64,000 bases of DNA, from the NCBI RefSeq assembly GCF_006345805.1, contig NC_043001.1, forward strand, positions 93,496,001-93,560,000. The letters are read 5' to 3'. Numbering within the stretch: the stretch's first letter is position 1; each line of letters begins with the position of its first letter. This document shows positions 8,521 to 55,796 of this stretch, piece after piece. The notes under the pieces were generated by a model that worked only from the letters and a program-made list of their open reading frames with translations, searched no databases and was not told the origin of the DNA. The DNA is from Octopus sinensis (lineage: Eukaryota). Position numbers and translations under genes: made by a program.

Positions 8521-11500
8521 CTGATAGAGATATGTTGAAAATAGATTACAGAACCGCTTGGATGAATTCAGTTAGCAATAAGCTTTCTGACTTCAGATTT
8601 AAAATTGGGGTTAAGGTTTTTTACTATAGATTAACGTTATATTTTAAGGCCATTTTAATATGGTTTAAGATGTGGTCGATTATGGCTGATTACAGTATTT
8701 TGTTAAAAGTATAATTTAATGTTATCGTTAAATACTGAATGTCAGCTACTGAAATTTACATGAGTAGTCAGCCATGAAGAACAAATGAGCAGTCAGCTGG
8801 TACCATAATAGCCATCCACTACCATTCATAACAGTCCGTCAATCACACTCTGGCAGCACACAACATGAGTCTATCACCTACTACTAAATTCAAATCAAGA
8901 CGAACAGTGGGGATGGCCTTGAAGTCGATGATTTTAAACTAACGTGGACAACACTATAACACTAGAATACCGCCTGAGGAAACACGATCAGATATCATTA
9001 TGCAAACACGCAGTTGCATAATCATATACTTGTATTTTTGCAGAATTACGTTGCGTGGAAACAACTGTAGTGATTAAAAACTAATTGTCCAACCGTACTC
9101 CTTCTCGCTGACACCGATTTCTTCAATTATGTATATGTATACACATACCTATAGACATGTACATATATATATATACATATATAATGTATTTATATTGTGT
9201 ATATATAATTTATTATATAATTTATATTTAGTAAATATGTATTATGTACGTAGTATATACACAAATATGTATAAATGGATGTTTATACATTATATAAACG
9301 TATATACAATCTACGAATATACACATAAGATGCATTATACTCGTGTGTGTGTATTCACAATCTATCTATCTATCTATATATCGATCTATATATCTATCGA
9401 TCTATCTATTTATACATTTGCCTATGTAATATTTTAATTTTATTTTCATACCGACTGTTTTCTTAGTTTGAAATCTATCAGAATAGAGATTTCGCTTTCA
9501 TCCTTGCGAAGGCAGAATAAATAGGAACCAAGACGCCGTTGAATATATAGACCATACACTCTCTTTACGTTATATCACACTACGTCTATATTAACAGTTA
9601 TCATTTCTCAGTACTAAACCTGATTATTGTAGAATCCAAATAACATATAGACTGATAACAATATTTAGATCGAAGCTCCACGTTTGGAGTTAAAATTGAA
9701 TTGCATCTATACAGTATATACCTATATAATAAATATTATTCCGGCACACATAAATATCACATATAAAACATGAAATTATATTTTTACAACTATAATTTTG
9801 TTAGTTTTGTTTCTCATGTTCCGTTTCGTGGGACGATTACATTCAAATATATTTTCAATGACTTTCAATGACATTCATTTCAAGGTTGAATAGTATATGG
9901 ATATCTGAATTGAATATTTTCTATTATTTAAGTCATCGAGGATTTCTAAAAATATTCAAACGGATAAAATATTTCACATAAGCTTTGTTTCATTTAGAGA
10001 GAACTTTTTGACTAAAGTAGAATTTTGTGATATTTTACACAAGCCTAAAAAAACCTATATAAAAAAAACTATATAATAGACTTGTCTGTTTTGTTTTTCT
10101 TTCCAGAGGAAAAAAACCCTCATTTAAGTGGTGTATAACGTGACTTGGTTAAAATGACAACATGTTGTTTTTTTAATGTTGTAATTGTACTATTTAATTG
10201 TTATTTATTCTGTTTTAGCAATGACTATTTTACAGAGGTAAGGCCCCCACTCCAAAAAAAAAATAATAATAAATAAAAAAGATAGAATTCTTTCAGTACC
10301 AAAAAGACACTATTGATTTTCAACTTGAACAGAGTAAAATTTTATTCAAAAGTTTAATACTGTAGGCTATTCGTCTTGAAGATCTTGAAATACACTGATA
10401 ATTATAAATGAATTTAATGAATTTTTTGTTTATGTATGTGTGTATGCGTAAGCGGTTCTCACTAAATGATGAAAAAAATTATTGTATCTAATATTTCTTT
10501 TCAGTTTTAGGTAGTAGTGTTCTTGAGTACTTCATCTGGAAATAACGTTCTATTTTATTGTGTATTACAATGAATAGTAAATATTGATTTCTTTTGACTC
10601 GGCACAAGACCATTGTTTTACTGGTTGAAGATATAGGCGATTAAACCAGCAGCCATATATTAATAATACATGTTATATATAGCCTGTTGAGATGAAAGAC
10701 AAACTAGATTACTGCTCGCTTTAAATTCAGAAATTGAAAATACCAAATTAAATATTCCAAGTCAACCAGTCCGAAGCTTTTCTGCTTCTGCATGCTCGCC
10801 CTTCTCTATTAGATATTAATATTCATTTGGAAAAAAATTTCAACGCCTTGCGAAGATTACATTGTTAATTATTTCAGTATAGTTTAATAAAAAAAAATAT
10901 TATTTCAATACTAACCGTGAGTATAGTGATATGCATGCTACCATACTTGAAGTGGTGAGCGGAAAATAATTTTTAATTAATTGAAATTATAACCACAGTG
11001 GAACAAAATCATCTGCGTTATGGAAATTCATTCTCACAAGTGGTAAAGGAGATAACTCCAAAAATTTCAATCGAAGGGAAAAAATTAAATTCTTCAAGGG
11101 AGGAGATAACGAGACTGATCTTTCGTAACTATGGTGAAAACATCGGGCATTTTTCGTCATTATGGAACTCTTCAGCGAATCATAGCCAACATAACGCTAT
11201 CTGATCGTAGACTGATTCGAGAATTAATTACTTTTTTTTGTTCCGTGAAACAGCATAGTAGTAATCCATATCGCTATAGAGTAGTGTGGTAAATGGTTAT
11301 TTGAGTATCTGGCTCCCATATCGAGCAAACATATGAATAAAGTACTTATATTGTACCCAACCTTTAGTTTTAGAGCTATATCTATGTGTGTATTATGTAA
11401 CGTGTCTTTCCTGAATTTAAGGTGGTGATGTTCCATCTTAATAGAGATTTGTTTCATATTTCTGGCTGGTTGTGTTACCCAGTGACTACTCCTTCTTAGC

Positions 11501-23734: not shown

Positions 23735-23895
23735 ACACCGTCGGTTACGACGACGCGGGTTCCGGTTGATCCGATCAGCGGAACAGCCTGCTCGTCAAAT
23801 TAGCGTGTATGTGACCGAGCACTCAACAGACATGTGCACCCATAACGTAGTTCTTGGGGAGATTCAGCGTGACACAGTTTCTGTAGTAACTTTGA
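23735..23895 (-). mobile_element. 3' fragment of the SINE C variant seen at 32251-32569
   Basis: Shares ccgtcggttacgacgacg...gattcagcgtgacacag with 32260-32392. Confidence 0.7.
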
Positions 23896-24139: not shown

Positions 24140-24300
<161 letters not shown>

Positions 24301-25301
24301 ATAAAAATGCACATATATACCTATTTGTGTGCTCATGTGTCTGTTTATTTATATGTTTGTATTAATGTCCGGAAGGACCATGTATGATACGAATGTTAAT
24401 ATTTGGAAGATAACAGGGAGAAAATTTGTTATTGAATCACAAAGCATGGTAAATTAAATCAAACTAATTCGCCATAATCAAGTGTCAAACATTTGTCTTT
24501 AATTTTACAAATCTCGAAATAAATAAGTGACGTTATTGTAATTATGTTCTAATATAATAATTGTCCCTATAAATATGTGTAATGTATTTTATATCATAAG
24601 AATTAATTTTAGACGTACTAATATATATTTTGGCATGTACGTGATTTGTTTTGGAGATATTTAGTGAAATATTCAGGCAAATATATAGAAGAGAATCCAG
24701 CTGGCTCATCGCTTTATGATTGCTTAAGATATCTGTCTATAGGAAAACACATATTATTCAATGGAAGGACAGGAATTGCATCAAGAAAAGAAGCCAAGGT
24801 TCTGTGGAAATAATCAGAGAAAGCGAGCCGCAAAGAAACCTTCTTGGAGGTTAACTGGAAATAAATTACGATTTCGGATAAATTTTCGCAAGAATAATAC
24901 GAGTGATTGTACTTAACACTGAAGGCTTCTACGAAGTTCAAAATTGCAGTGAAATTGGGAAATAGAAGCCAGAAGGAGAATGAGAAATACGCAAGTAACT
25001 AGAAGTTAGTGATAGAAAAAGTGCAAATACAGATAGCGAAAATGAGAGTAAAAAGAAGGAAAAAGAGGAAAGAATGAGAGAACTATATTAAGAGAATGCA
25101 ACATAATAAATGGATTGATACCCACCCACACACATTAATATATATTTATATACATATGTACAGTATATATAAATACTTACACACACACACATATATATAT
25201 ACATACATATATATAAATATATATATATATGCATACGTACATATATATATGTGTGTGTGTGTTTGTATTTGTGTTTGTGTATGTACACACAGACATATAT
25301 A

Positions 25302-26719: not shown

Positions 26720-26967
26720 AAATGCGCCCTTTTAAAGCCTAGCCAGGGTCATGGGCCCGGTTTCCCGGTTTCAATAGCGTATGTGTTCCCCAGCTGGATG
26801 GGAAGCCAGTCCATCGCAGCGTTACTCCATTTTGCCAGCTAAGTGGACTATAGCAACGTGAAATGAAGTGTTTTGCTCAAGAACACAACGCATCACCCGG
26901 TCCAGGAATCGAAACTACAATCTTACGATCATGATGCTGACACCCTAACCACTAAGCCAGGCGCCTC

Positions 26968-28483: not shown

Positions 28484-28974
28484 ATTTCGTTACTACCCAG
28501 AAGGGGCTAAACACAGAGAGGACAAACAAGTACAGACAAACGGATTAAGTTGATTACATCGACTCCAGTGCGTCGACTCCAGTGCGTAACTGGTATTTAA
28601 TTTATCGACCCCGAAAGGATGAAAGGCAAAGTCGACCTCGGCGGAATTTGAACTCAAAATGCAGCGGCGGATGAAACACCACAAAGCATTTCGCCCGGCG
28701 TGCTAACGTTTCTGCCAGCTCGCCGCCTGTAAACTGACAATACCTATTTCTTTACTACCCACAAGGGGCTACACACAGAGGGGACAAACAAGAACATACA
28801 AATGGATTAAGTCGATTATATCGACCCCAGTGCGTAACTGGTACTTAATTTATCGACCACGAAAAGATGAAAGGTAAAGTCGACCTCGGCGGAATTTGAA
28901 CTCAGAATGTAGCGGCGGACGAACTACCACAAAGCATTACGCTCGGCGTAACGTTTCTGCCAGCTCGCCGCCTG
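28484..28974 (-). mobile_element. SINE family A dimer delimited by three copies of a 16-bp flank
   Basis: TAAACTG(T/A)CAATACCT at 28468-28483, 28730-28745 and 28975-28990. Confidence 0.85.
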
Positions 28975-30002: not shown

Positions 30003-30185
30003 CATCTTTCTCTCAATTCGTAATATGTTGGCGCATCTTATTAGTTCCAATTTTCCACTTTCAAAAGACAGTTGTGAATGAAAAAGAATTAGCTTGTTAA
30101 CAACGTCTGCTAAAGAATCTTTGCGTAGACCCCCCAGGGCAATTCCAATTCCCCACCACATCTTATTCTCTAATCTCTGTGAATT
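30003..30185 (-). CDS. Candidate symmetric phase-0 exon, 61 aa (NSQRLENKMWWGIG...ILRIERKM)
   Basis: Consensus donor ATG|gtaagt. The frame opens at the acceptor TAG, is 183 nt long and is non-repetitive. Confidence 0.4.
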
Positions 30186-30670: not shown

Positions 30671-31119
30671 TGCTTATTGCGATCAAAACAAATTAGAAAG
30701 TCGAGAATAATCAATACACAGATAATAAAGGTAAATTAAACAGCTACCATATTATAAATTATGTTCTCATCACTATAGCAAGTTTCTATCTTTAATTTCA
30801 GAGCTCCTCTCTGACATCATTATTACTTCGATTCTGAAGGTGAATCTCTTTCAGGCATACTCAGTTTACACAGAATGAAAACATTGAATTTTCTTGAAAT
30901 TCCTGCTGGTTTCGGAGGGTTCTGGTTTGAATAAAATGATGCAGAAATGGTAATACTATGTCATGTTTCACTTCAACATCTAAGAAATGCTTGGATGTGT
31001 AAATCTAATTTCATATATAACTTCCTCTGAAACCAGTATCCATGTGCTACAATAATGTGTGTATATGTGTATTAGAGAGAGAGTGTGTGTACATATATAC
31101 ATATATTTATACATACATA

Positions 31120-31201
<82 letters not shown>

Positions 31202-31269
31202 TTTTAATGTACGTAACTTTCATATAAATGTTATTTCGTTTATGCAAGAAACACACACATACATACACG

Positions 31270-31540: not shown

Positions 31541-31980
31541 CATATATATATACATATATATATATATACTTCTCAGAATACTAATTATTTCTAATTTAGG
31601 TAGAAGTCTAGGGATACTGATGGGAGGGATTAGTGGCAGTTAGTGTGTCCCGTACTTGAATGTTACTTTATTTTATCGATTCTGAGAGCATGAAAGGTAA
31701 GGTTGGCGTTGATGGAGTTTGAACTCAGAACGTAGAAGACCGGCATAAATTTTGCAAAGCATTTATTTGGATTGTGTAATTAATTTGTTAGCTCGCCGCC
31801 ATCATATTTGTATATTTATAATTAACAACAAGAACAATAATACGCACAGACACGCACGCACAAACTCGCATTCCTTTTGCATATAATTACATTGAAAAAC
31901 GTAGGCACAGGTAAGCAAAAATTATAAATAGGACGCGTGCGACATTTGGAGTCCTTGTTTGCCATTAAGATGTGACTTAC

Positions 31981-32117
31981 CTCCTAAAAGACAGTGTCAG
32001 CGGCGATGTATGTAAATATGAAGGGACTTTCGGTCACCTGTAGGCGTGTGCCATGCTCCAATGATGCATGTTAATTGTAGAGTTTGGCGCGGAAGTAGAC
32101 GCGGGAGAGCCACTTAC
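31981..32117 (-). other. 137-nt exon-like segment with stops in all frames, starting with a regenerated 5' splice site (candidate RS-exon, or a non-coding exon)
   Basis: (T)13-gtttgtag|GTAAGTG at 32138-32111 and downstream donor GAG|gtaagtc at 31981/31980. Confidence 0.4.
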
Positions 32118-32250
32118 CTACAAACAAAAAAAAAAAAACACTTTAAATTTTAAAATTTCATACTTTTCCGAAGAATAATGGTGATGTATATTTTAAATGA
32201 AAAAGATGAATTAAGTACGTAACACAGCGTGTACAATTGACAATATGTAT

Positions 32251-32569
32251 TAAAAGACTCCGCCGGTTACGACGACGAGGGTCCCAGTTGATACGATCAA
32301 CGGAACAGCTTGCTCGTGAAATTAACGTGCTGAGCATTCCACAGACACGTGTACCCTTAACGTAGTTCTCGGGGATAATCAGCGTGACACAGAGAGTGAC
32401 AAGGCTGACCCTTTCAAATACAAGTACAACTCATTTTTGCCAGCTGAGTGGACTGGAGCAACGTGAAATAAAGTGTCTTGCTCAAAGACACAACGCGTCG
32501 CCGGGAATCGAACTCACAACCTTACGATCATGAGCCGAATGCCCTAACCACTAAGCCACGCGCCCTCAC
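32251..32569 (-). mobile_element. SINE family C variant with 13-bp target-site duplication
   Basis: TGACAATATGTAT at 32238-32250 and 32570-32582. The family C head carries a different 3' half. Confidence 0.9.
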
Positions 32570-35058: not shown

Positions 35059-35290
35059 GGGCGGCGAACTGGCAGAAACGTTAGCACGCCGGCCGAAATG
35101 CGTAGCCGTATTTCGTCTGCCGTACGTTCTGAGTTCAAATTCCGCCGAGGTCGACTTTGCCTTTCATCCTTTCGGTGTCGATAAATTAAGTACCAGTTGC
35201 GCACTTGGTTCGATGTAATCGACTTAATCCGTTTGTCTGTCCTTGTTTGTCCCCTCTGTGTTTGGCCCCTTTGTGGGTAATAAAGAAACA
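35059..35290 (+). mobile_element. SINE family A, full length
   Basis: Head GGCGGCGAACTGGCAGAAACGTTAG, B-box GAGTTCAAATTCC, core and tail. Confidence 0.9.
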
Positions 35291-36495: not shown

Positions 36496-37290
<795 letters not shown>

Positions 37291-38471: not shown

Positions 38472-38719
38472 GGAGGCGCGTGGCTTAGTGGTTAGGGTGT
38501 CAGCACCTTGATGGTAAGATTGTGGTTTCGATTCCTGGACCGGGCGACGCGTTGTGTACTTGAGCAAAACACTTAATTTCACGTTGCTCTAGTCCACTCA
38601 GCTGGCAAAATGAGCAACGTTGCGATGGAGTAGCGTCCCGTCCAGCTGGGGAACACATACGCCATAGAAACCGAGAAACCGGGTCCATGAGTGTGGCTAG
38701 GCTTTAAAAGGGCCCATTT
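38472..38719 (+). mobile_element. SINE family C, full length
   Basis: Reverse complement of 26720-26968. Confidence 0.9.
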
Positions 38720-39474: not shown

Positions 39475-39853
39475 TTCTTTTCTACTCTAGGCACAAGGCC
39501 AGAAATTTTTGAAGAGGGTAGAAGTCGATTAGATCGACCCCAGTTCGCAACTGGTGCTTAATAATTTATCGACACCAAAAGGATGAAAGGAAAAGTCCAC
39601 CTAGGCGGAATTTGAACTTAGGACGTAAAGACAGACAAAATACCTATCTCTTTATTACCCACAAGGGGTTAAACATAGAAGGGACAAACAAGGACAGACA
39701 AAGGTATTAAGTCGATTATATCGACCCCAGTGCGGAACTGGTACTTAATTTATCGACCCCGAAAGGATGAAAGGCAAAGTCGACCTCGGCGGATTTTGAA
39801 CTCAGAACGTTCAGCTAAGCATTTCGCCCGGCGTGCTAACGTTTCTACCAACC
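39475..39853 (-). mobile_element. SINE family A, two tandem units
   Basis: Reverse-complement match to units 2-3 of 488-1075. Confidence 0.85.
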
Positions 39854-41289: not shown

Positions 41290-42605
41290 AAAGGAAAAAT
41301 GACGTGGATGTTGAGAATGACGGAATAACCTGCCATCCTTCAGATAAGCACGATAATGAACATAGTGGTTATGTTTTTTTTTATAGATTTTAATGGTGAA
41401 TATAACGCTGAGTAAGAATGAAAAAGAGTGGGAGAAAGTAAAAGAATTATAGATGGATAAAGAAAGGGAGAGGTGGGAAGAGAGGGTGAGAGAGACAGAG
41501 AGATAGGCAAATAATGGTAGATAGAATATAGGGGAGATAGAAGAGAATGGGAGAAAAGCATATGGGGAGAACGGGAGAGGAATAGGGCTTCGGAATTCAG
41601 GGAAAGATGTTGAAGCTTTGTAAAGAAAGTAGAAGTGAATGTTTTGAAGAGATGATAAACCATAAAGAGAAATAGAACAAAAGGGAGAATAAGAAAGATA
41701 AATAGAGAGATGAATGGGAGAAGAGAGAAAGAAAGATAACGTAAGAATAAGAGCGAGCGAGAGACAGAGAGAGAGAAAGAGAGAGGAAAGAAGAGAAAGA
41801 AGCTGAAGAGAGAAAGGGATTACGAGATATAAAGTCAAAGATGAAGTAAGGTTCTTGAGCGAAATATTCAAGAATGCATTTCCCATAAGAGGGCACATTT
41901 CTCGCTCTATTCAAAAAGTAATTAACGAATCAATTAAATCAAACGCCTGCGCTCTCTTTCATTCTAATCCTTTCATTCATTCATTCATTCATTCATTCAT
42001 TTCATTTTGTCTTTAATGCATTCTATATTTCTCTTTCTCTATTCCTATCTTCACTTCATTCCTATATTCTCTGACCCTCTCACATCCTAATTCTGTCTCC
42101 ATTTCTTTTATCTGCATGGATCTCTTTCTTCTATACACAGTTTCTCCCTCCACAGCATGCATTCACGCACATACACATAAACATACAGACACAGTGACAT
42201 AGAAGCATACACTCAACCGTACACAAACATCCAATTTTTCTCATACACGCTTGCTATAAAGCCTTTCACATTCTTCCCATACGCCACTTCACACAAACAA
42301 TCTCACCCTTTCTGAGTCCTTCAGCATTTCTCTTTTGTCTTGCCTTAAATTTGTTTTCACATTTCATAACATTTTAATGCCTTTACAGAGGTATTTCTCT
42401 ATCAGTCTCTGATACCCTCCATCTCTTTTCTCTCGTATCTTCCTTTCTTTGTCAGTCTCCCTTTCTCGCTGTGTATCAGTTTATTTCTCCATTGCACTTT
42501 TCACATCTCTCTCTCGCTCTCCCATCTTTCTTTCTTCCTTTCGTTCTTTCTTTCTTTCGTTCTTTCTTTCTTTCGTTCTTCCTTTCTTTCTTTCTTTCAT
42601 TGTAC

Positions 42606-42683
<78 letters not shown>

Positions 42684-42704
42684 GTATACCTATGTATGCA
42701 TAAG

Positions 42705-42755
<51 letters not shown>

Positions 42756-42905
42756 GTATATATATATATGTGTATATGTGTTTGTGTATGTTTATGTATA
42801 TCTATAGGTATATATATATATATATATATACATATATATATACCTATATATATACATACACATACACAAACACAAACACACACATATATATATATACCCA
42901 ATGCC

Positions 42906-42946
<41 letters not shown>

Positions 42947-43001
42947 CATTTTCTGTCTGTATCCCTCTCTGCCTGTCTCTCTGTCTGCCTCTTTCCCCCT
43001 A

Positions 43002-43040
<39 letters not shown>

Positions 43041-43609
43041 ACTCTCCAACTAGCCATATTCTGAAAGTATCACTTCAATTCTTATATTGATATATATTTC
43101 CAACACATAAATTTCACCTCACATATATTTTCATATTAACCACCACCAGTGCCGCCTCCTCCTCCACCACCACCACCACCACCACCACCACCACCACCAC
43201 CACCATCATCATCATCAACCACATGTTTTTCTCCTTTGCGCTTTTTCATTCCCTCCTTCTTATCGCTTTATCTCTCCGATTCTTATCTCACACGTTATTT
43301 TTCTCCCTTTGCTCTCTTTGTCCACAATGCTCCGCCACTCCGTGCCAGCCTACCCATGAAAATATCATTACAGAGTCTCTCTCCATACACAGCTTAAAAG
43401 GAATTGTAAAGGTTTATTGAATTTATCTCCATATTAAGTAACACAACAAAGCCAAAACAAAGTAATTTGTAAAGCATCTAAAGCCACTTCTGGCATGAAC
43501 AGCGACGGCGACGACTACGACGACGACGACGACAACGATAATAACGTTAATAACAACAGTAAGGAAAGCTGGAGAAACTAATAATAAAACTACTACTACT
43601 ACTACTACA

Positions 43610-43661
<52 letters not shown>

Positions 43662-43737
43662 TTACCACCTCCACCACCACCACCACCGTCGTCGCCAGAA
43701 CGACGACGACGACGACCTCCACCACCACCACCAACAT

Positions 43738-43775
<38 letters not shown>

Positions 43776-43894
43776 ATAATAATAATAATAATAATACTAG
43801 TGCTACTGCTGCTGCAACCGTCACCGTCAGAACGACGACGATGACGACAACGACGACGACTACCACCACCAACACCATCAAGAACAATACCACC

Positions 43895-43927
<33 letters not shown>

Positions 43928-44900
43928 GTTACTACTACTACTACTACTACTACCACCACTACCGCCACATTTGGAAATAATAACGTATAATAGTAATAAA
44001 ATGCAATAATGATAATGCTGATGGTGGTAGTGGTGGTGGTGGTGGTAGTAGTGGCAGTGGTGCTGCAGCTGATGATGATGATAACGGTGATGATGATAAG
44101 AGTAACAACAAAAGGAGAAATGAAAGTGAAAGACGAAGAAAAGGAAAAAGAAGAAAAGAAGTAGTGCAAAGCATTAATGACAGCAACTTAGAAGTTTGTA
44201 CATAGAAGTTTCTACATAATTTTTAGTCATATAAGCTCAACGTACACGAGGAGTAACTAAAAAAGAACATTATGAATAAGGATAAAGAATTATGACAAAA
44301 AATATCGATAAGAAGAATAACAATGAACAAATAAATAAATAAGAATATGATTATAATAATGAAAAATAACCATAGCTAAAAATATTAATAGTATAACATG
44401 TAAATATAAATGTAACGCTATAAATTGTTATGAAAAATGGAGTGAGGAGTTGGACGTCTGAAATATGAACATTCAATATAGCCTTTAGGGTAAACAGCAG
44501 CAACAGCTGCAGAAACAGCAGTAGAAACAACAAGTGCAGCAGCGGCAGCAGCAACGGCAGCGGCAACTAGAGCAGCAGCCACATGTGCAGTCGGAACAAT
44601 AATTGCATCAGCGCGGTATTGACATCAGTATGAACATGAGAACAGCGCAGTCAACAAATTTAAGTAACACAACACCATCAGAACAGTGAAAAAGAAAAAA
44701 ACAAAAACAAAAACAAAAACAGCAACAGTAAGATCAAGAACAACTATAACAACAACAACAACCACAACTACAACAATCACCACAAGCAAGCCGACAAGAA
44801 GAAACTGAATGAGCAATGAATGTAAACGATGGACAGAAACAATAACTGTGTGGAACAACAACAACAACAACAACGACAACAGCGTTTAAAATACGATAGG
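41290..44900. repeat. Extended low-complexity block: GA-rich, CT-rich, (TATC)n, (TA)n and trinucleotide mosaics (ACT/ACC/ACG/AAT/CAA/CAG)
   Basis: Directly visible. It is the source of the 203-, 197- and 248-aa homopolymeric ORFs. Confidence 0.9.
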
Positions 44901-55546: not shown

Positions 55547-55796
55547 AAATGCGCCCTTTTAAAGCCTAACCAGGCTCATAGAGCTGGTTTCCCGATTTCG
55601 ATGGTGTATGTGTTCCCCGGCTGGACAGGGCGCCAGTCCATCGCAGCGTAAGCTCATTTTTGCTAGCTGAGTGGACTGGAGCAACGTGAAAGGACGTGTT
55701 TTGCTCAAGAACACAACTTGTCGCCCGGTCCAGGAATCGATACCACAGTCTTACGATCATGATGCTGACAACCTAACCACTAAGTCAAGTGCCTCC
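55547..55796 (-). mobile_element. SINE family C
   Basis: Homologous to 26720-26968. Confidence 0.85.

What the first reader, a model, noticed from the sequence alone, without database searches (positions are those of the whole stretch)
31975..32140. Candidate recursive splice site with a stop-containing RS-exon (minus strand)
Seen: a 13-T polypyrimidine tract and TAG acceptor are followed immediately by a perfect donor consensus (ttttttttttttt gtttgtag|GTAAGT). A second perfect donor (GAG|gtaagt) lies 137 nt downstream. The segment between them is unique, more GC-rich than its flanks, and closed in all three frames. Established: this layout matches Drosophila ratchet points (AG|GT zero-length exons) and vertebrate RS-exons, where a regenerated 5' splice site competes with a downstream one and inclusion introduces premature stops. 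Inference: a long minus-strand intron here may be removed recursively. I am not aware of this being characterised in cephalopods, but could not search. Caveats: weaker AG|GT motifs also occur on the + strand (16667, 45886), and an extra AG lies just upstream of the T tract (32141).
Basis: partly seen in the sequence, partly recalled or inferred. Interest (0 to 1): 0.7.

Follow-up and report, generated by a model that had tools for sequence, protein, structure and literature searches.

The report
Candidate recursive splice site, function unproven
A textbook-looking "ratchet" splice signal sits on the minus strand: an intron-end signal fused to an intron-start signal, with a second intron-start 137 bases on. 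The tools found no evidence that it is transcribed, lies in an intron or is conserved, so it stays a plausible but untested candidate.

Summary
The motif is real and at the stated coordinates. On the minus strand, T13 (32138-32126) and gtttgTAG are followed directly by GTAAGT (32117-32112). A second GAG|GTAAGT lies at 31981|31980. The 137 nt between them have stops in all three frames.

- **Strength within the window:** the acceptor ranks 3rd of 3343 minus-strand AGs. The downstream donor is the best on that strand. The pair is the best exon-like unit on either strand.
- **Chance estimate:** an order-3 Markov null gives 0.018 such junctions per window, and none of 500 simulations had a second donor. 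Reversed-sequence controls come close for the junction alone. I put chance at about 10^-3 to 10^-2 per window, which means tens to hundreds of such sites genome-wide.
- **What could not be tested:** minus-strand transcription, a host intron, conservation, junction and lariat reads. No ORF in the window has a homologue, the proposed downstream exon at 30185 is unsupported, and strand-composition bias only weakly favours minus-strand transcription.
- **What was excluded:** a structured RNA and an in-window repeat.

My best reading is a splice-competent recursive-splicing exon unit (confidence 0.4). The rivals are a chance motif (0.33) and an ordinary non-coding exon (0.2). If real, it is a new member of a known kind.

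The parts
32141..32150 (-). Probable branch-point region aaatttAAAg. The adenosines at 32144-32142 lie 24-26 nt upstream of the 3' splice-site AG. It includes the extra AG (32142-32141), which is too close to the branch point to serve as an acceptor.
   Evidence: Read directly. There is no other A between here and the TAG. The assignment is an inference from the degenerate metazoan yUnAy rule (own knowledge).
32126..32138 (-). T13 polypyrimidine tract.
   Evidence: It is the only T-run of 13 or more on either strand.
32118..32125 (-). End of the 3' splice site: gtttgTAG, with the AG at 32119-32118.
   Evidence: Acceptor PWM score 13.6, rank 3/3343 on the minus strand.
32112..32117 (-). GTAAGT directly after the acceptor AG. 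This would be the regenerated (recursive) 5' splice site.
   Evidence: Donor score 10.2 in its genomic context, top 11 on the minus strand.
31981..32117 (-). 137-nt candidate RS-exon. GC 0.50, stops in all three frames, length 3n+2.
   Evidence: Best acceptor+donor pair in the window on either strand.
32032..32040 (-). Internal alternative donor CAG|GTGACC (G at 32037). It would give an 80-nt exon, 32117..32038, that is open in frame 0.
   Evidence: donor score 9.4; sequence.
31975..31983 (-). Downstream donor GAG|GTAAGT, which would define the 3' end of the RS-exon.
   Evidence: Donor score 11.8, the best donor on the minus strand.
32257..32564 (-). Flanking SINE-like repeat upstream on the minus strand, with a tRNA-like head at 32563-32494. 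It bounds the unique segment and is not part of the splice unit.
   Evidence: Copies at 23735-23877, 26824-26965, 38475-38614 and 55653-55784. Sub-threshold Rfam tRNA match, 25 bits.
31658..31734 (+). Flanking fragment of a second SINE-like repeat, downstream on the minus strand. It bounds the unique segment.
   Evidence: Copies at 35123-35192 and 39735-39810.

Best explanation
The site is a splice-competent recursive-splicing unit on the minus strand.

**Proposed mechanism, if a minus-strand pre-mRNA runs through here:**
1. The spliceosome defines the 137-nt segment as an exon, using the branch region near 32144, the T13 tract, the TAG acceptor and the downstream GAG|GTAAGT. The weaker CAG|GTGACC at 80 nt could serve instead.
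2. The segment is ligated to the upstream exon.
3. Ligation places GTAAGT directly after the upstream exon and so regenerates a consensus 5' splice site.
4. Two outcomes then compete. If the regenerated site is used, the 137 nt leave with the rest of the intron (a recursive step). If the downstream donor is used, a stop-containing, frame-shifting exon is included.

The two intronic hexamers are identical. The balance would therefore depend on the last three bases of the upstream exon and on trans-acting factors.

**Shown:** the motif, its strength and its rarity. **Inferred:** transcription, intron context and actual use.
For: - The motif is exactly as described.
- The acceptor ranks 3/3343 and the downstream donor is the best on the strand. 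The pair is the best exon-like unit of the whole window on both strands.
- This is the only T-run of 13 or more in the window.
- Two of the three AGGTAAGT octamers in 128 kb lie 137 nt apart.
- The order-3 Markov null gives 0.018 such junctions per 128 kb, and 0 of 500 simulations with a second donor.
- No reversed-sequence control junction has a downstream donor.
- The segment has stops in all frames and its length is 3n+2. [quoted passage not shown]
- Most fly recursive sites have a further 5' splice site a short distance downstream (PMC6224609).
- Branch-point and AG geometry is coherent.
- Composition is weakly consistent with minus-strand transcription: T>A on the minus strand over 16-56 kb; AATAAA 101 on plus against 59 on minus; T-runs of 6 or more, 40 on plus against 62 on minus.
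- It is not a structured RNA and not an in-window repeat.
Against: - There is no evidence of transcription and no flanking exon. None of the ORFs searched has a homologue, whether of 45 aa or more (25.5-38.4 kb) or 59 aa or more (rest of the window).
- Annotated octopus genes average about 24 kb with 5.4-kb introns, and coding sequence is about 1% of the genome (PMC6279123). By annotation, an exon-free 64-kb window is more likely intergenic than inside a single intron.
- Reversed-sequence controls produced AG|GT junctions of nearly equal summed score (21.8 and 23.5, against 23.8). The Markov null therefore understates chance. In a multi-gigabase genome, tens to hundreds of such composites are expected at random.
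- The strand asymmetry loses significance once simple repeats are masked and base composition is allowed for (p = 0.18-0.26).
- At 137 nt the exon is longer than the roughly 50 nt typical of fly cryptic RS-exons.
- Conservation is untested.
Confidence: 0.4

Rival explanations
1. It is a chance composite in DNA that is either not transcribed or transcribed only from the plus strand. A slippage-generated or retroposon-derived T/A run happens to lie next to AGGTAAGT, and a second AGGTAAGT happens to lie nearby. It has no function.
For: - Reversed-sequence controls, which have no biological meaning, yield junctions of similar summed score.
- My estimate of 10^-3 to 10^-2 per window implies tens to hundreds of such sites per genome.
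- There is no gene evidence in the window.
- Annotated genes cover only a minority of octopus genomes.
- The GC and CpG content of the segment is ordinary for this window.
- The pattern was defined after it was seen.
Against: - The full composite (rank-3 acceptor, a consensus donor fused to it, and the strand's best donor 137 nt on) was never reached in 500 Markov simulations or in 256 kb of reversed controls.
- All elements share one strand and sit in the correct order and spacing, including a usable branch region.
Confidence: 0.33
2. It is an ordinary expressed non-coding exon of an unannotated minus-strand transcript, either a 5' UTR exon or a lncRNA exon. It may have alternative donors at 32118, 32038 and 31981. 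The GTAAGT at its start would be incidental, or it would be the donor of a longer upstream exon, and the segment is normally included rather than removed recursively.
For: - The strong acceptor and strong donor make it the best exon-like pair in the window, with GC higher than the immediate flanks.
- The segment has no coding potential.
- Hundreds of annotated human exons also reconstitute a 5' splice site and are still mostly included (PMC6224609).
- A pair 32443..32118, which ends at the first GTAAGT, also passes loose thresholds.
Against: - For an arbitrary exon, starting with a perfect GTAAGT has a probability of about 10^-3.
- If spliced to an upstream exon, the regenerated consensus site would compete whatever its origin, so this rival differs from the main reading in outcome rather than in mechanism.
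- No partner exons were identified, and the 30185 candidate fails.
Confidence: 0.2
3. This is an explanation of origin rather than of function. The unit may be the antisense face of an old plus-strand retroposed sequence, with its A13 tail (32126-32138 on plus) supplying the pyrimidine tract. That is how antisense Alu tails create new exons in primates.
For: - On the plus strand the unique GC-rich block ends ...CCACTTACCTACAAAC-A13.
- SINE-type retroposons are frequent in the window.
Against: - No target-site duplication was found within 2 kb.
- There is no second copy in the window, no match to any Rfam family and no protein homology.
Confidence: 0.07

Closest known systems
Drosophila intronic ratchet points with cryptic RS-exons (Ubx, kuz, Bx; Duff 2015, Joseph 2018, Pai 2018, Joseph & Lai 2021)
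   Same: A long pyrimidine tract, AG|GTAAGT, a downstream 5' splice site that defines a short exon, and non-coding, out-of-frame exon content. Donor competition decides between skipping and inclusion (PMC8605326; PMC6110457; PMC6224609).
   Different: Fly cryptic RS-exons are about 50 nt, usually with the extra donor less than 100 nt downstream. Here the perfect donor is at 137 nt and only a weaker one at 80 nt. Fly sites are ultraconserved and lie in long introns of expressed genes with sawtooth and junction evidence. None of that is known for this site.
Vertebrate cryptic RS-exons in long neuronal genes (e.g. CADM2; Sibley 2015, as cited in PMC6224609)
   Same: An RS-exon is defined first, then a reconstituted 5' splice site competes with the exon's own donor. 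Inclusion gives a stop-containing isoform.
   Different: The vertebrate cases are few (about 10 efficient intronic sites) and lie in very long introns of known genes. Here the host gene, the intron length and the upstream exon sequence that completes the site are all unknown.
Annotated RS-exons repressed by the exon junction complex (Blazquez 2018, PMC6224609)
   Same: Any exon that starts with a 5'-splice-site-like sequence reconstitutes a donor after ligation.
   Different: Those exons are mostly constitutive coding exons. This segment has no open frame and no annotation.
Exonisation of antisense retroposons through their poly(A)-derived pyrimidine tract (Alu exons; own knowledge)
   Same: On the opposite strand, the T13 tract is an A13 run at the end of a GC-rich unique block.
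   Different: There is no target-site duplication, no repeat family and no identified source element.

Membership tests
Recursive splice site (ratchet point) with RS-exon | Juxtaposed strong 3' splice site (pyrimidine tract + YAG) and 5' splice site (GTRAGT) around AG|GT | tested here: met
   T13-gtttgTAG|GTAAGT. Acceptor rank 3/3343, donor in the top 11. Highest combined score of 279 AGGT sites: 23.8, against 17.8 for the next.
Recursive splice site (ratchet point) with RS-exon | A further 5' splice site a short distance downstream that defines the RS-exon | tested here: met
   CAG|GTGACC at 80 nt (score 9.4) and GAG|GTAAGT at 137 nt (score 11.8, best on the strand). The strong donor is further away than the under-100 nt usual in flies.
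Recursive splice site (ratchet point) with RS-exon | Exon content non-coding or out of frame, so that inclusion is disruptive | tested here: met
   Stops in all three frames; 137 = 3n+2.
Recursive splice site (ratchet point) with RS-exon | Regenerated donor at least as strong as the RS-exon's own donor (needed for efficient removal) | tested here: inconclusive
   Both intronic hexamers are GTAAGT. The exonic -3..-1 of the regenerated site come from an unknown upstream exon.
Recursive splice site (ratchet point) with RS-exon | Lies inside a long intron of a gene transcribed from the same strand | tested here: inconclusive
   No exon with a homologue anywhere in the 64 kb. Weak T>A, AATAAA and T-run asymmetry favours the minus strand as sense, but it is not significant after masking and composition correction.
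Recursive splice site (ratchet point) with RS-exon | Conservation of the acceptor|donor motif above flanking intron | not testable with these tools
   No eukaryotic genome collection is reachable. Exact-protein look-ups and a metagenome DNA scan found nothing.
Recursive splice site (ratchet point) with RS-exon | RNA evidence: sawtooth coverage, junction reads to the site, lariats from the regenerated donor | not testable with these tools
   No RNA-seq access.
Structured non-coding RNA gene (snRNA, snoRNA, miRNA, SL RNA) | Match to a covariance model, or a fold more stable than shuffles | tested here: not met
   No Rfam match at the site, even at E<=5. Fold z-scores +0.18 (minus strand) and +1.16 (plus strand).
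Retroposed element with poly(A) tail on the plus strand | Target-site duplication and/or further copies | tested here: not met
   No duplication of 9 nt or more within 2 kb. No other copy in the window. Genome-wide copy number is untestable.
Protein-coding exon | Open frame with homologues | tested here: not met
   No open frame. The neighbouring ORFs have no homologues.

The most novel reading that the evidence does not exclude
This is a working recursive splice site in a long intron of a cephalopod gene. It would be the first outside insects and vertebrates and the first in a lophotrochozoan. Its 137-nt poison RS-exon would be bounded at both ends by AG|GTAAGT, so inclusion or removal could be tuned purely by donor competition.
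Probability: 0.25. Interest if true: 0.55.

Novelty: new member of a known kind. Interest (0 to 1): 0.35.

Why it matters
Recursive splicing is documented in Drosophila (hundreds of intronic sites) and in vertebrates (a few cryptic sites plus many annotated RS-exons).

- **Literature gap:** in the library searched, only one paper mentions both recursive splicing and cephalopods, and only in passing. The cross-species comparison I read covered deuterostomes, fly and yeast.
- **If real:** coleoid genomes are large, repeat-rich and neurally complex. A verified site would show that the mechanism operates in a third bilaterian branch. It would also give a seed motif for a genome-wide census.
- **Limits:** specialists already regard the mechanism as unified across metazoans, so a single sequence-only candidate is a modest lead rather than a surprise.

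Tried and rejected
- **Downstream exon at 30185:** the ORF (MWWGIG...) has no homologue in the word-indexed 5.8-billion set or in the 1.84-billion representative scan. It has no Pfam hit and its acceptors are weak. I rejected it as a supported exon.
- **Gene context by homology:** I searched concatenated ORFs of 45 aa or more from 25.5-38.4 kb and of 59 aa or more from the rest of the window and found nothing. Exons lying in ORFs shorter than these cut-offs were not examined.
- **Other assemblies or transcripts:** exact look-ups of two ORFs overlapping the site and a 24-mer scan of metagenome contigs returned nothing.
- **Structured RNA:** Rfam at gathering threshold and at E<=5, folding of both strands and ARAGORN were all negative at the site.
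- **Repeat or retroposon origin:** self-BLAST at word sizes 9 and 7 and a target-site-duplication search were negative.
- **CpG-island or promoter reading:** CpG observed/expected is about 1.0, close to the window average of 0.89. The top CpG windows are SINEs. Not supported.
- **Third AGGTAAGT (24296) as a second ratchet point:** rejected. It abuts a (GATA)n array and its acceptor score is 2.0.
- **Organism check:** a literature search for SINE strings found nothing relevant. The cephalopod origin rests only on my recollection of octopus SINE sequence.

Full report
**What is there**

On the minus strand the sequence reads aaatttaaAG-tg-T13-gtttgTAG|GTAAGTggctc.... The acceptor AG is at 32119-32118 and the GTAAGT at 32117-32112. 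After 137 nt comes ...cttttagGAG|GTAAGTcac, with the second donor G at 31980. The 137 nt have stops in all three frames, and the length is 3n+2. GC is 0.50, against 0.23 immediately upstream and 0.41 downstream. An internal CAG|GTGACC at 32037 would give an 80-nt exon open in one frame.

**Is it more than chance?**

AGGTAAGT occurs three times on the minus strand and never on the plus strand, with about 1.1 expected per strand. The third copy (24296) abuts a 40-unit (GATA)n array and has no pyrimidine tract.

I scored all sites with simple metazoan splice-site weight matrices. The frequencies come from my own knowledge and are not cephalopod-specific.
- The acceptor ranks 3rd of 3343 minus-strand AGs and 6th of 6439 on both strands.
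- Donor 31980 is the best donor on the minus strand.
- Donor 32117 is in the top 11.
- The T13 is the only T-run of 13 or more in the window.
- The pair 32117..31981 is the best acceptor+donor pair on either strand.
- Among all 279 AGGT sites the combined score is 23.8, against 17.8 for the runner-up.

Five hundred order-3 Markov simulations gave 0.018 junctions of this quality per 128 kb, and none with a second strong donor within 30-300 nt.

A harsher control gave a different picture. The reversed, uncomplemented sequences keep homopolymers and local composition. They produced two junctions of similar summed score, 21.8 (acceptor 11.9, donor 9.9) and 23.5 (acceptor 16.1, but a weak donor of 7.4). 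Neither has a downstream donor.

I therefore put the chance of the full composite at roughly 10^-3 to 10^-2 per window. That is unusual for one window. It still implies tens to hundreds of random instances in a multi-gigabase genome, and the pattern was defined after it was seen.

**What it is not**

- No Rfam family matches at the site, even at E<=5. The only nearby matches are microsatellite-driven miRNA look-alikes at 31.05-31.2 kb and a sub-threshold tRNA-like SINE head at 32494-32563.
- Neither strand folds better than shuffles, with z-scores of +0.18 and +1.16.
- The block 31895-32260 has no other copy in the window. It is bounded by SINE-like repeats at 32257-32564 and 31658-31734.
- On the plus strand the T13 is an A13 that ends the GC-rich block. 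That could be an old retroposon tail, but no target-site duplication was found.
- GC and CpG content are ordinary. Fifty-six non-repeat segments are as GC-rich, and CpG observed/expected is about 1.0 against a window mean of 0.89.

**Anatomy in favour of a working 3' splice site**

Between the tttAAAg at 32147-32141 and the TAG there is no adenosine at all. The branch point would therefore be one of the A's at 32144-32142, 24-26 nt from the acceptor AG, which is a normal distance. The "extra" AG at 32142-32141 directly follows those A's. It is too close to a branch point to be used, so the first usable AG is the one fused to GTAAGT. This is inference from general splicing rules, not a test.

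**Gene context, the weak point**

I found no coding exon in the 64 kb.
- The ORF at 30185..30003, proposed as a downstream exon, has no homologue, no Pfam domain and weak acceptors (ranks of about 300-450 of 3343).
- Fifty-four ORFs of 45 aa or more between 25.5 and 38.4 kb, and 59 ORFs of 59 aa or more from the rest of the window, gave no hit in the 5.8-billion-protein set.
- Exact look-ups of ORFs overlapping the site and a metagenome DNA scan were empty.

The window is therefore either intergenic or lies wholly within one very long intron or non-coding transcript. Published octopus annotation gives mean genes of 23.6 kb, mean introns of 5.4 kb and about 1% coding sequence (PMC6279123). By annotation that makes the intergenic option the commoner one.

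Composition leans the other way, but weakly. On the plus strand A exceeds T across 16-56 kb. AATAAA is 101 on plus against 59 on minus. T-runs of 6 or more are 40 on plus against 62 on minus. This is the direction expected if the minus strand were the sense strand of a transcription unit. After masking repeats and allowing for base composition, the AATAAA excess is not significant (p = 0.18-0.26).

**Mechanism proposed**

If a minus-strand pre-mRNA crosses the site, the segment is recognised by exon definition and ligated to the upstream exon. GTAAGT then follows that exon and regenerates a consensus donor. Use of the regenerated donor removes the 137 nt with the downstream intron, which is the recursive step. 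Use of the donor at 31980 includes a stop-containing, frame-shifting exon.

This is the scheme established for fly ratchet points and vertebrate RS-exons (PMC8605326; PMC6224609; PMC6110457). In flies the stronger donor wins. Here the two intronic hexamers are identical, so I predict a mixed or regulated outcome that depends on the unknown upstream exon end.

**Comparison and membership**

The sequence-defined features of the family are met: the fused acceptor and donor, a downstream donor, and a non-coding, out-of-frame body. Relative donor strength and the host-intron criterion are inconclusive. Conservation and RNA evidence, which are what actually define accepted sites in the literature, cannot be tested here.

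The exon is longer than the roughly 50 nt typical of flies. The strong donor lies beyond the under-100 nt window seen for most fly sites, although a weaker donor lies at 80 nt.

**Verdict**

| Reading | Confidence |
|---|---|
| Genuine splice-competent RS-exon unit | 0.40 |
| Chance composite in untranscribed or antisense DNA | 0.33 |
| Ordinary expressed non-coding exon or alternative-donor exon | 0.20 |
| Antisense retroposon-tail origin (remaining share) | 0.07 |

If real, it is a new member of a known kind, in a lineage where I found no report of recursive splicing. Interest is moderate to low until RNA or comparative data are examined.

Noticed in passing
window 24140-24302: A (TATC/GATA)n microsatellite of about 41 units, 97% pure. 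The window's third AGGTAAGT (minus strand, 24296) is simply the junction of unique sequence with this array.
   Followed up: yes
window 32429-32564, 26824-26965, 38475-38614, 55653-55784; also 32257-32392 and 23735-23877: A tRNA-derived SINE-like family about 82-84% identical between copies. One head (32494-32563, minus strand) gives a sub-threshold Rfam tRNA match of 25 bits, and ARAGORN calls no tRNA. Four of the five head copies share one orientation.
   Followed up: partly
window 31658-31734, 35123-35192, 39735-39810, 28867-28912: A second SINE-like family containing ...GGAGTTTGAACTCAGAACGTAG.... Its translations (FHPFGVDKL, RNWYLIYRPRKDERQSRPRRNLNSE) recur among the window's ORFs. From memory it resembles an abundant octopus SINE. 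That is unverified.
   Followed up: partly
window 36724-36936 (+): A 71-aa ORF (…DANRPDIILKDFTQKTCLLIDMTIPIDINV…KYKDMGIEISKM). From memory it resembles a C-terminal segment common in invertebrate retroelement ORFs. It has no Pfam hit and no hit in the protein search. An exon-like pair (36978..36889, minus strand) lies antisense to it.
   Followed up: partly
window 10107-10237 (+): The second-best exon-like acceptor+donor pair in the window (scores 12.7 and 11.7, 131 nt, GC 0.27, no open frame). It shows that strong splice-like pairs also occur without the fused donor.
   Followed up: no
window 31697 and 31911 (+): Two of the five best plus-strand donor-like sites (AAG|GTAAGG, inside a SINE, and CAG|GTAAGC) lie within 300 nt of the candidate, so this 450-bp stretch is rich in U1-complementary motifs on both strands. 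No plus-strand acceptor scoring 8 or more pairs with them.
   Followed up: partly
window 42000-44200: An extended low-complexity block with GC skew of -0.56 over 42-44 kb, (TATC)n and (AT)n arrays and long homopolymer-codon ORFs. It produces the longest 'ORFs' of the window (up to 254 aa), all of them artefacts of simple sequence.
   Followed up: partly
window 31055-31215: Rfam mir-297, mir-466 and related matches (up to 52 bits, all far below their gathering scores) on both strands of a TA/TG-rich simple repeat. These are false positives of low-complexity sequence.
   Followed up: yes
whole window: Strand asymmetry: AATAAA is 101 on plus against 59 on minus (22 against 6 in 32-48 kb), poly-T runs are commoner on the minus strand, and A>T on the plus strand over 16-56 kb. 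This could mark a long minus-strand transcription unit, but it is not significant after masking and composition correction.
   Followed up: partly
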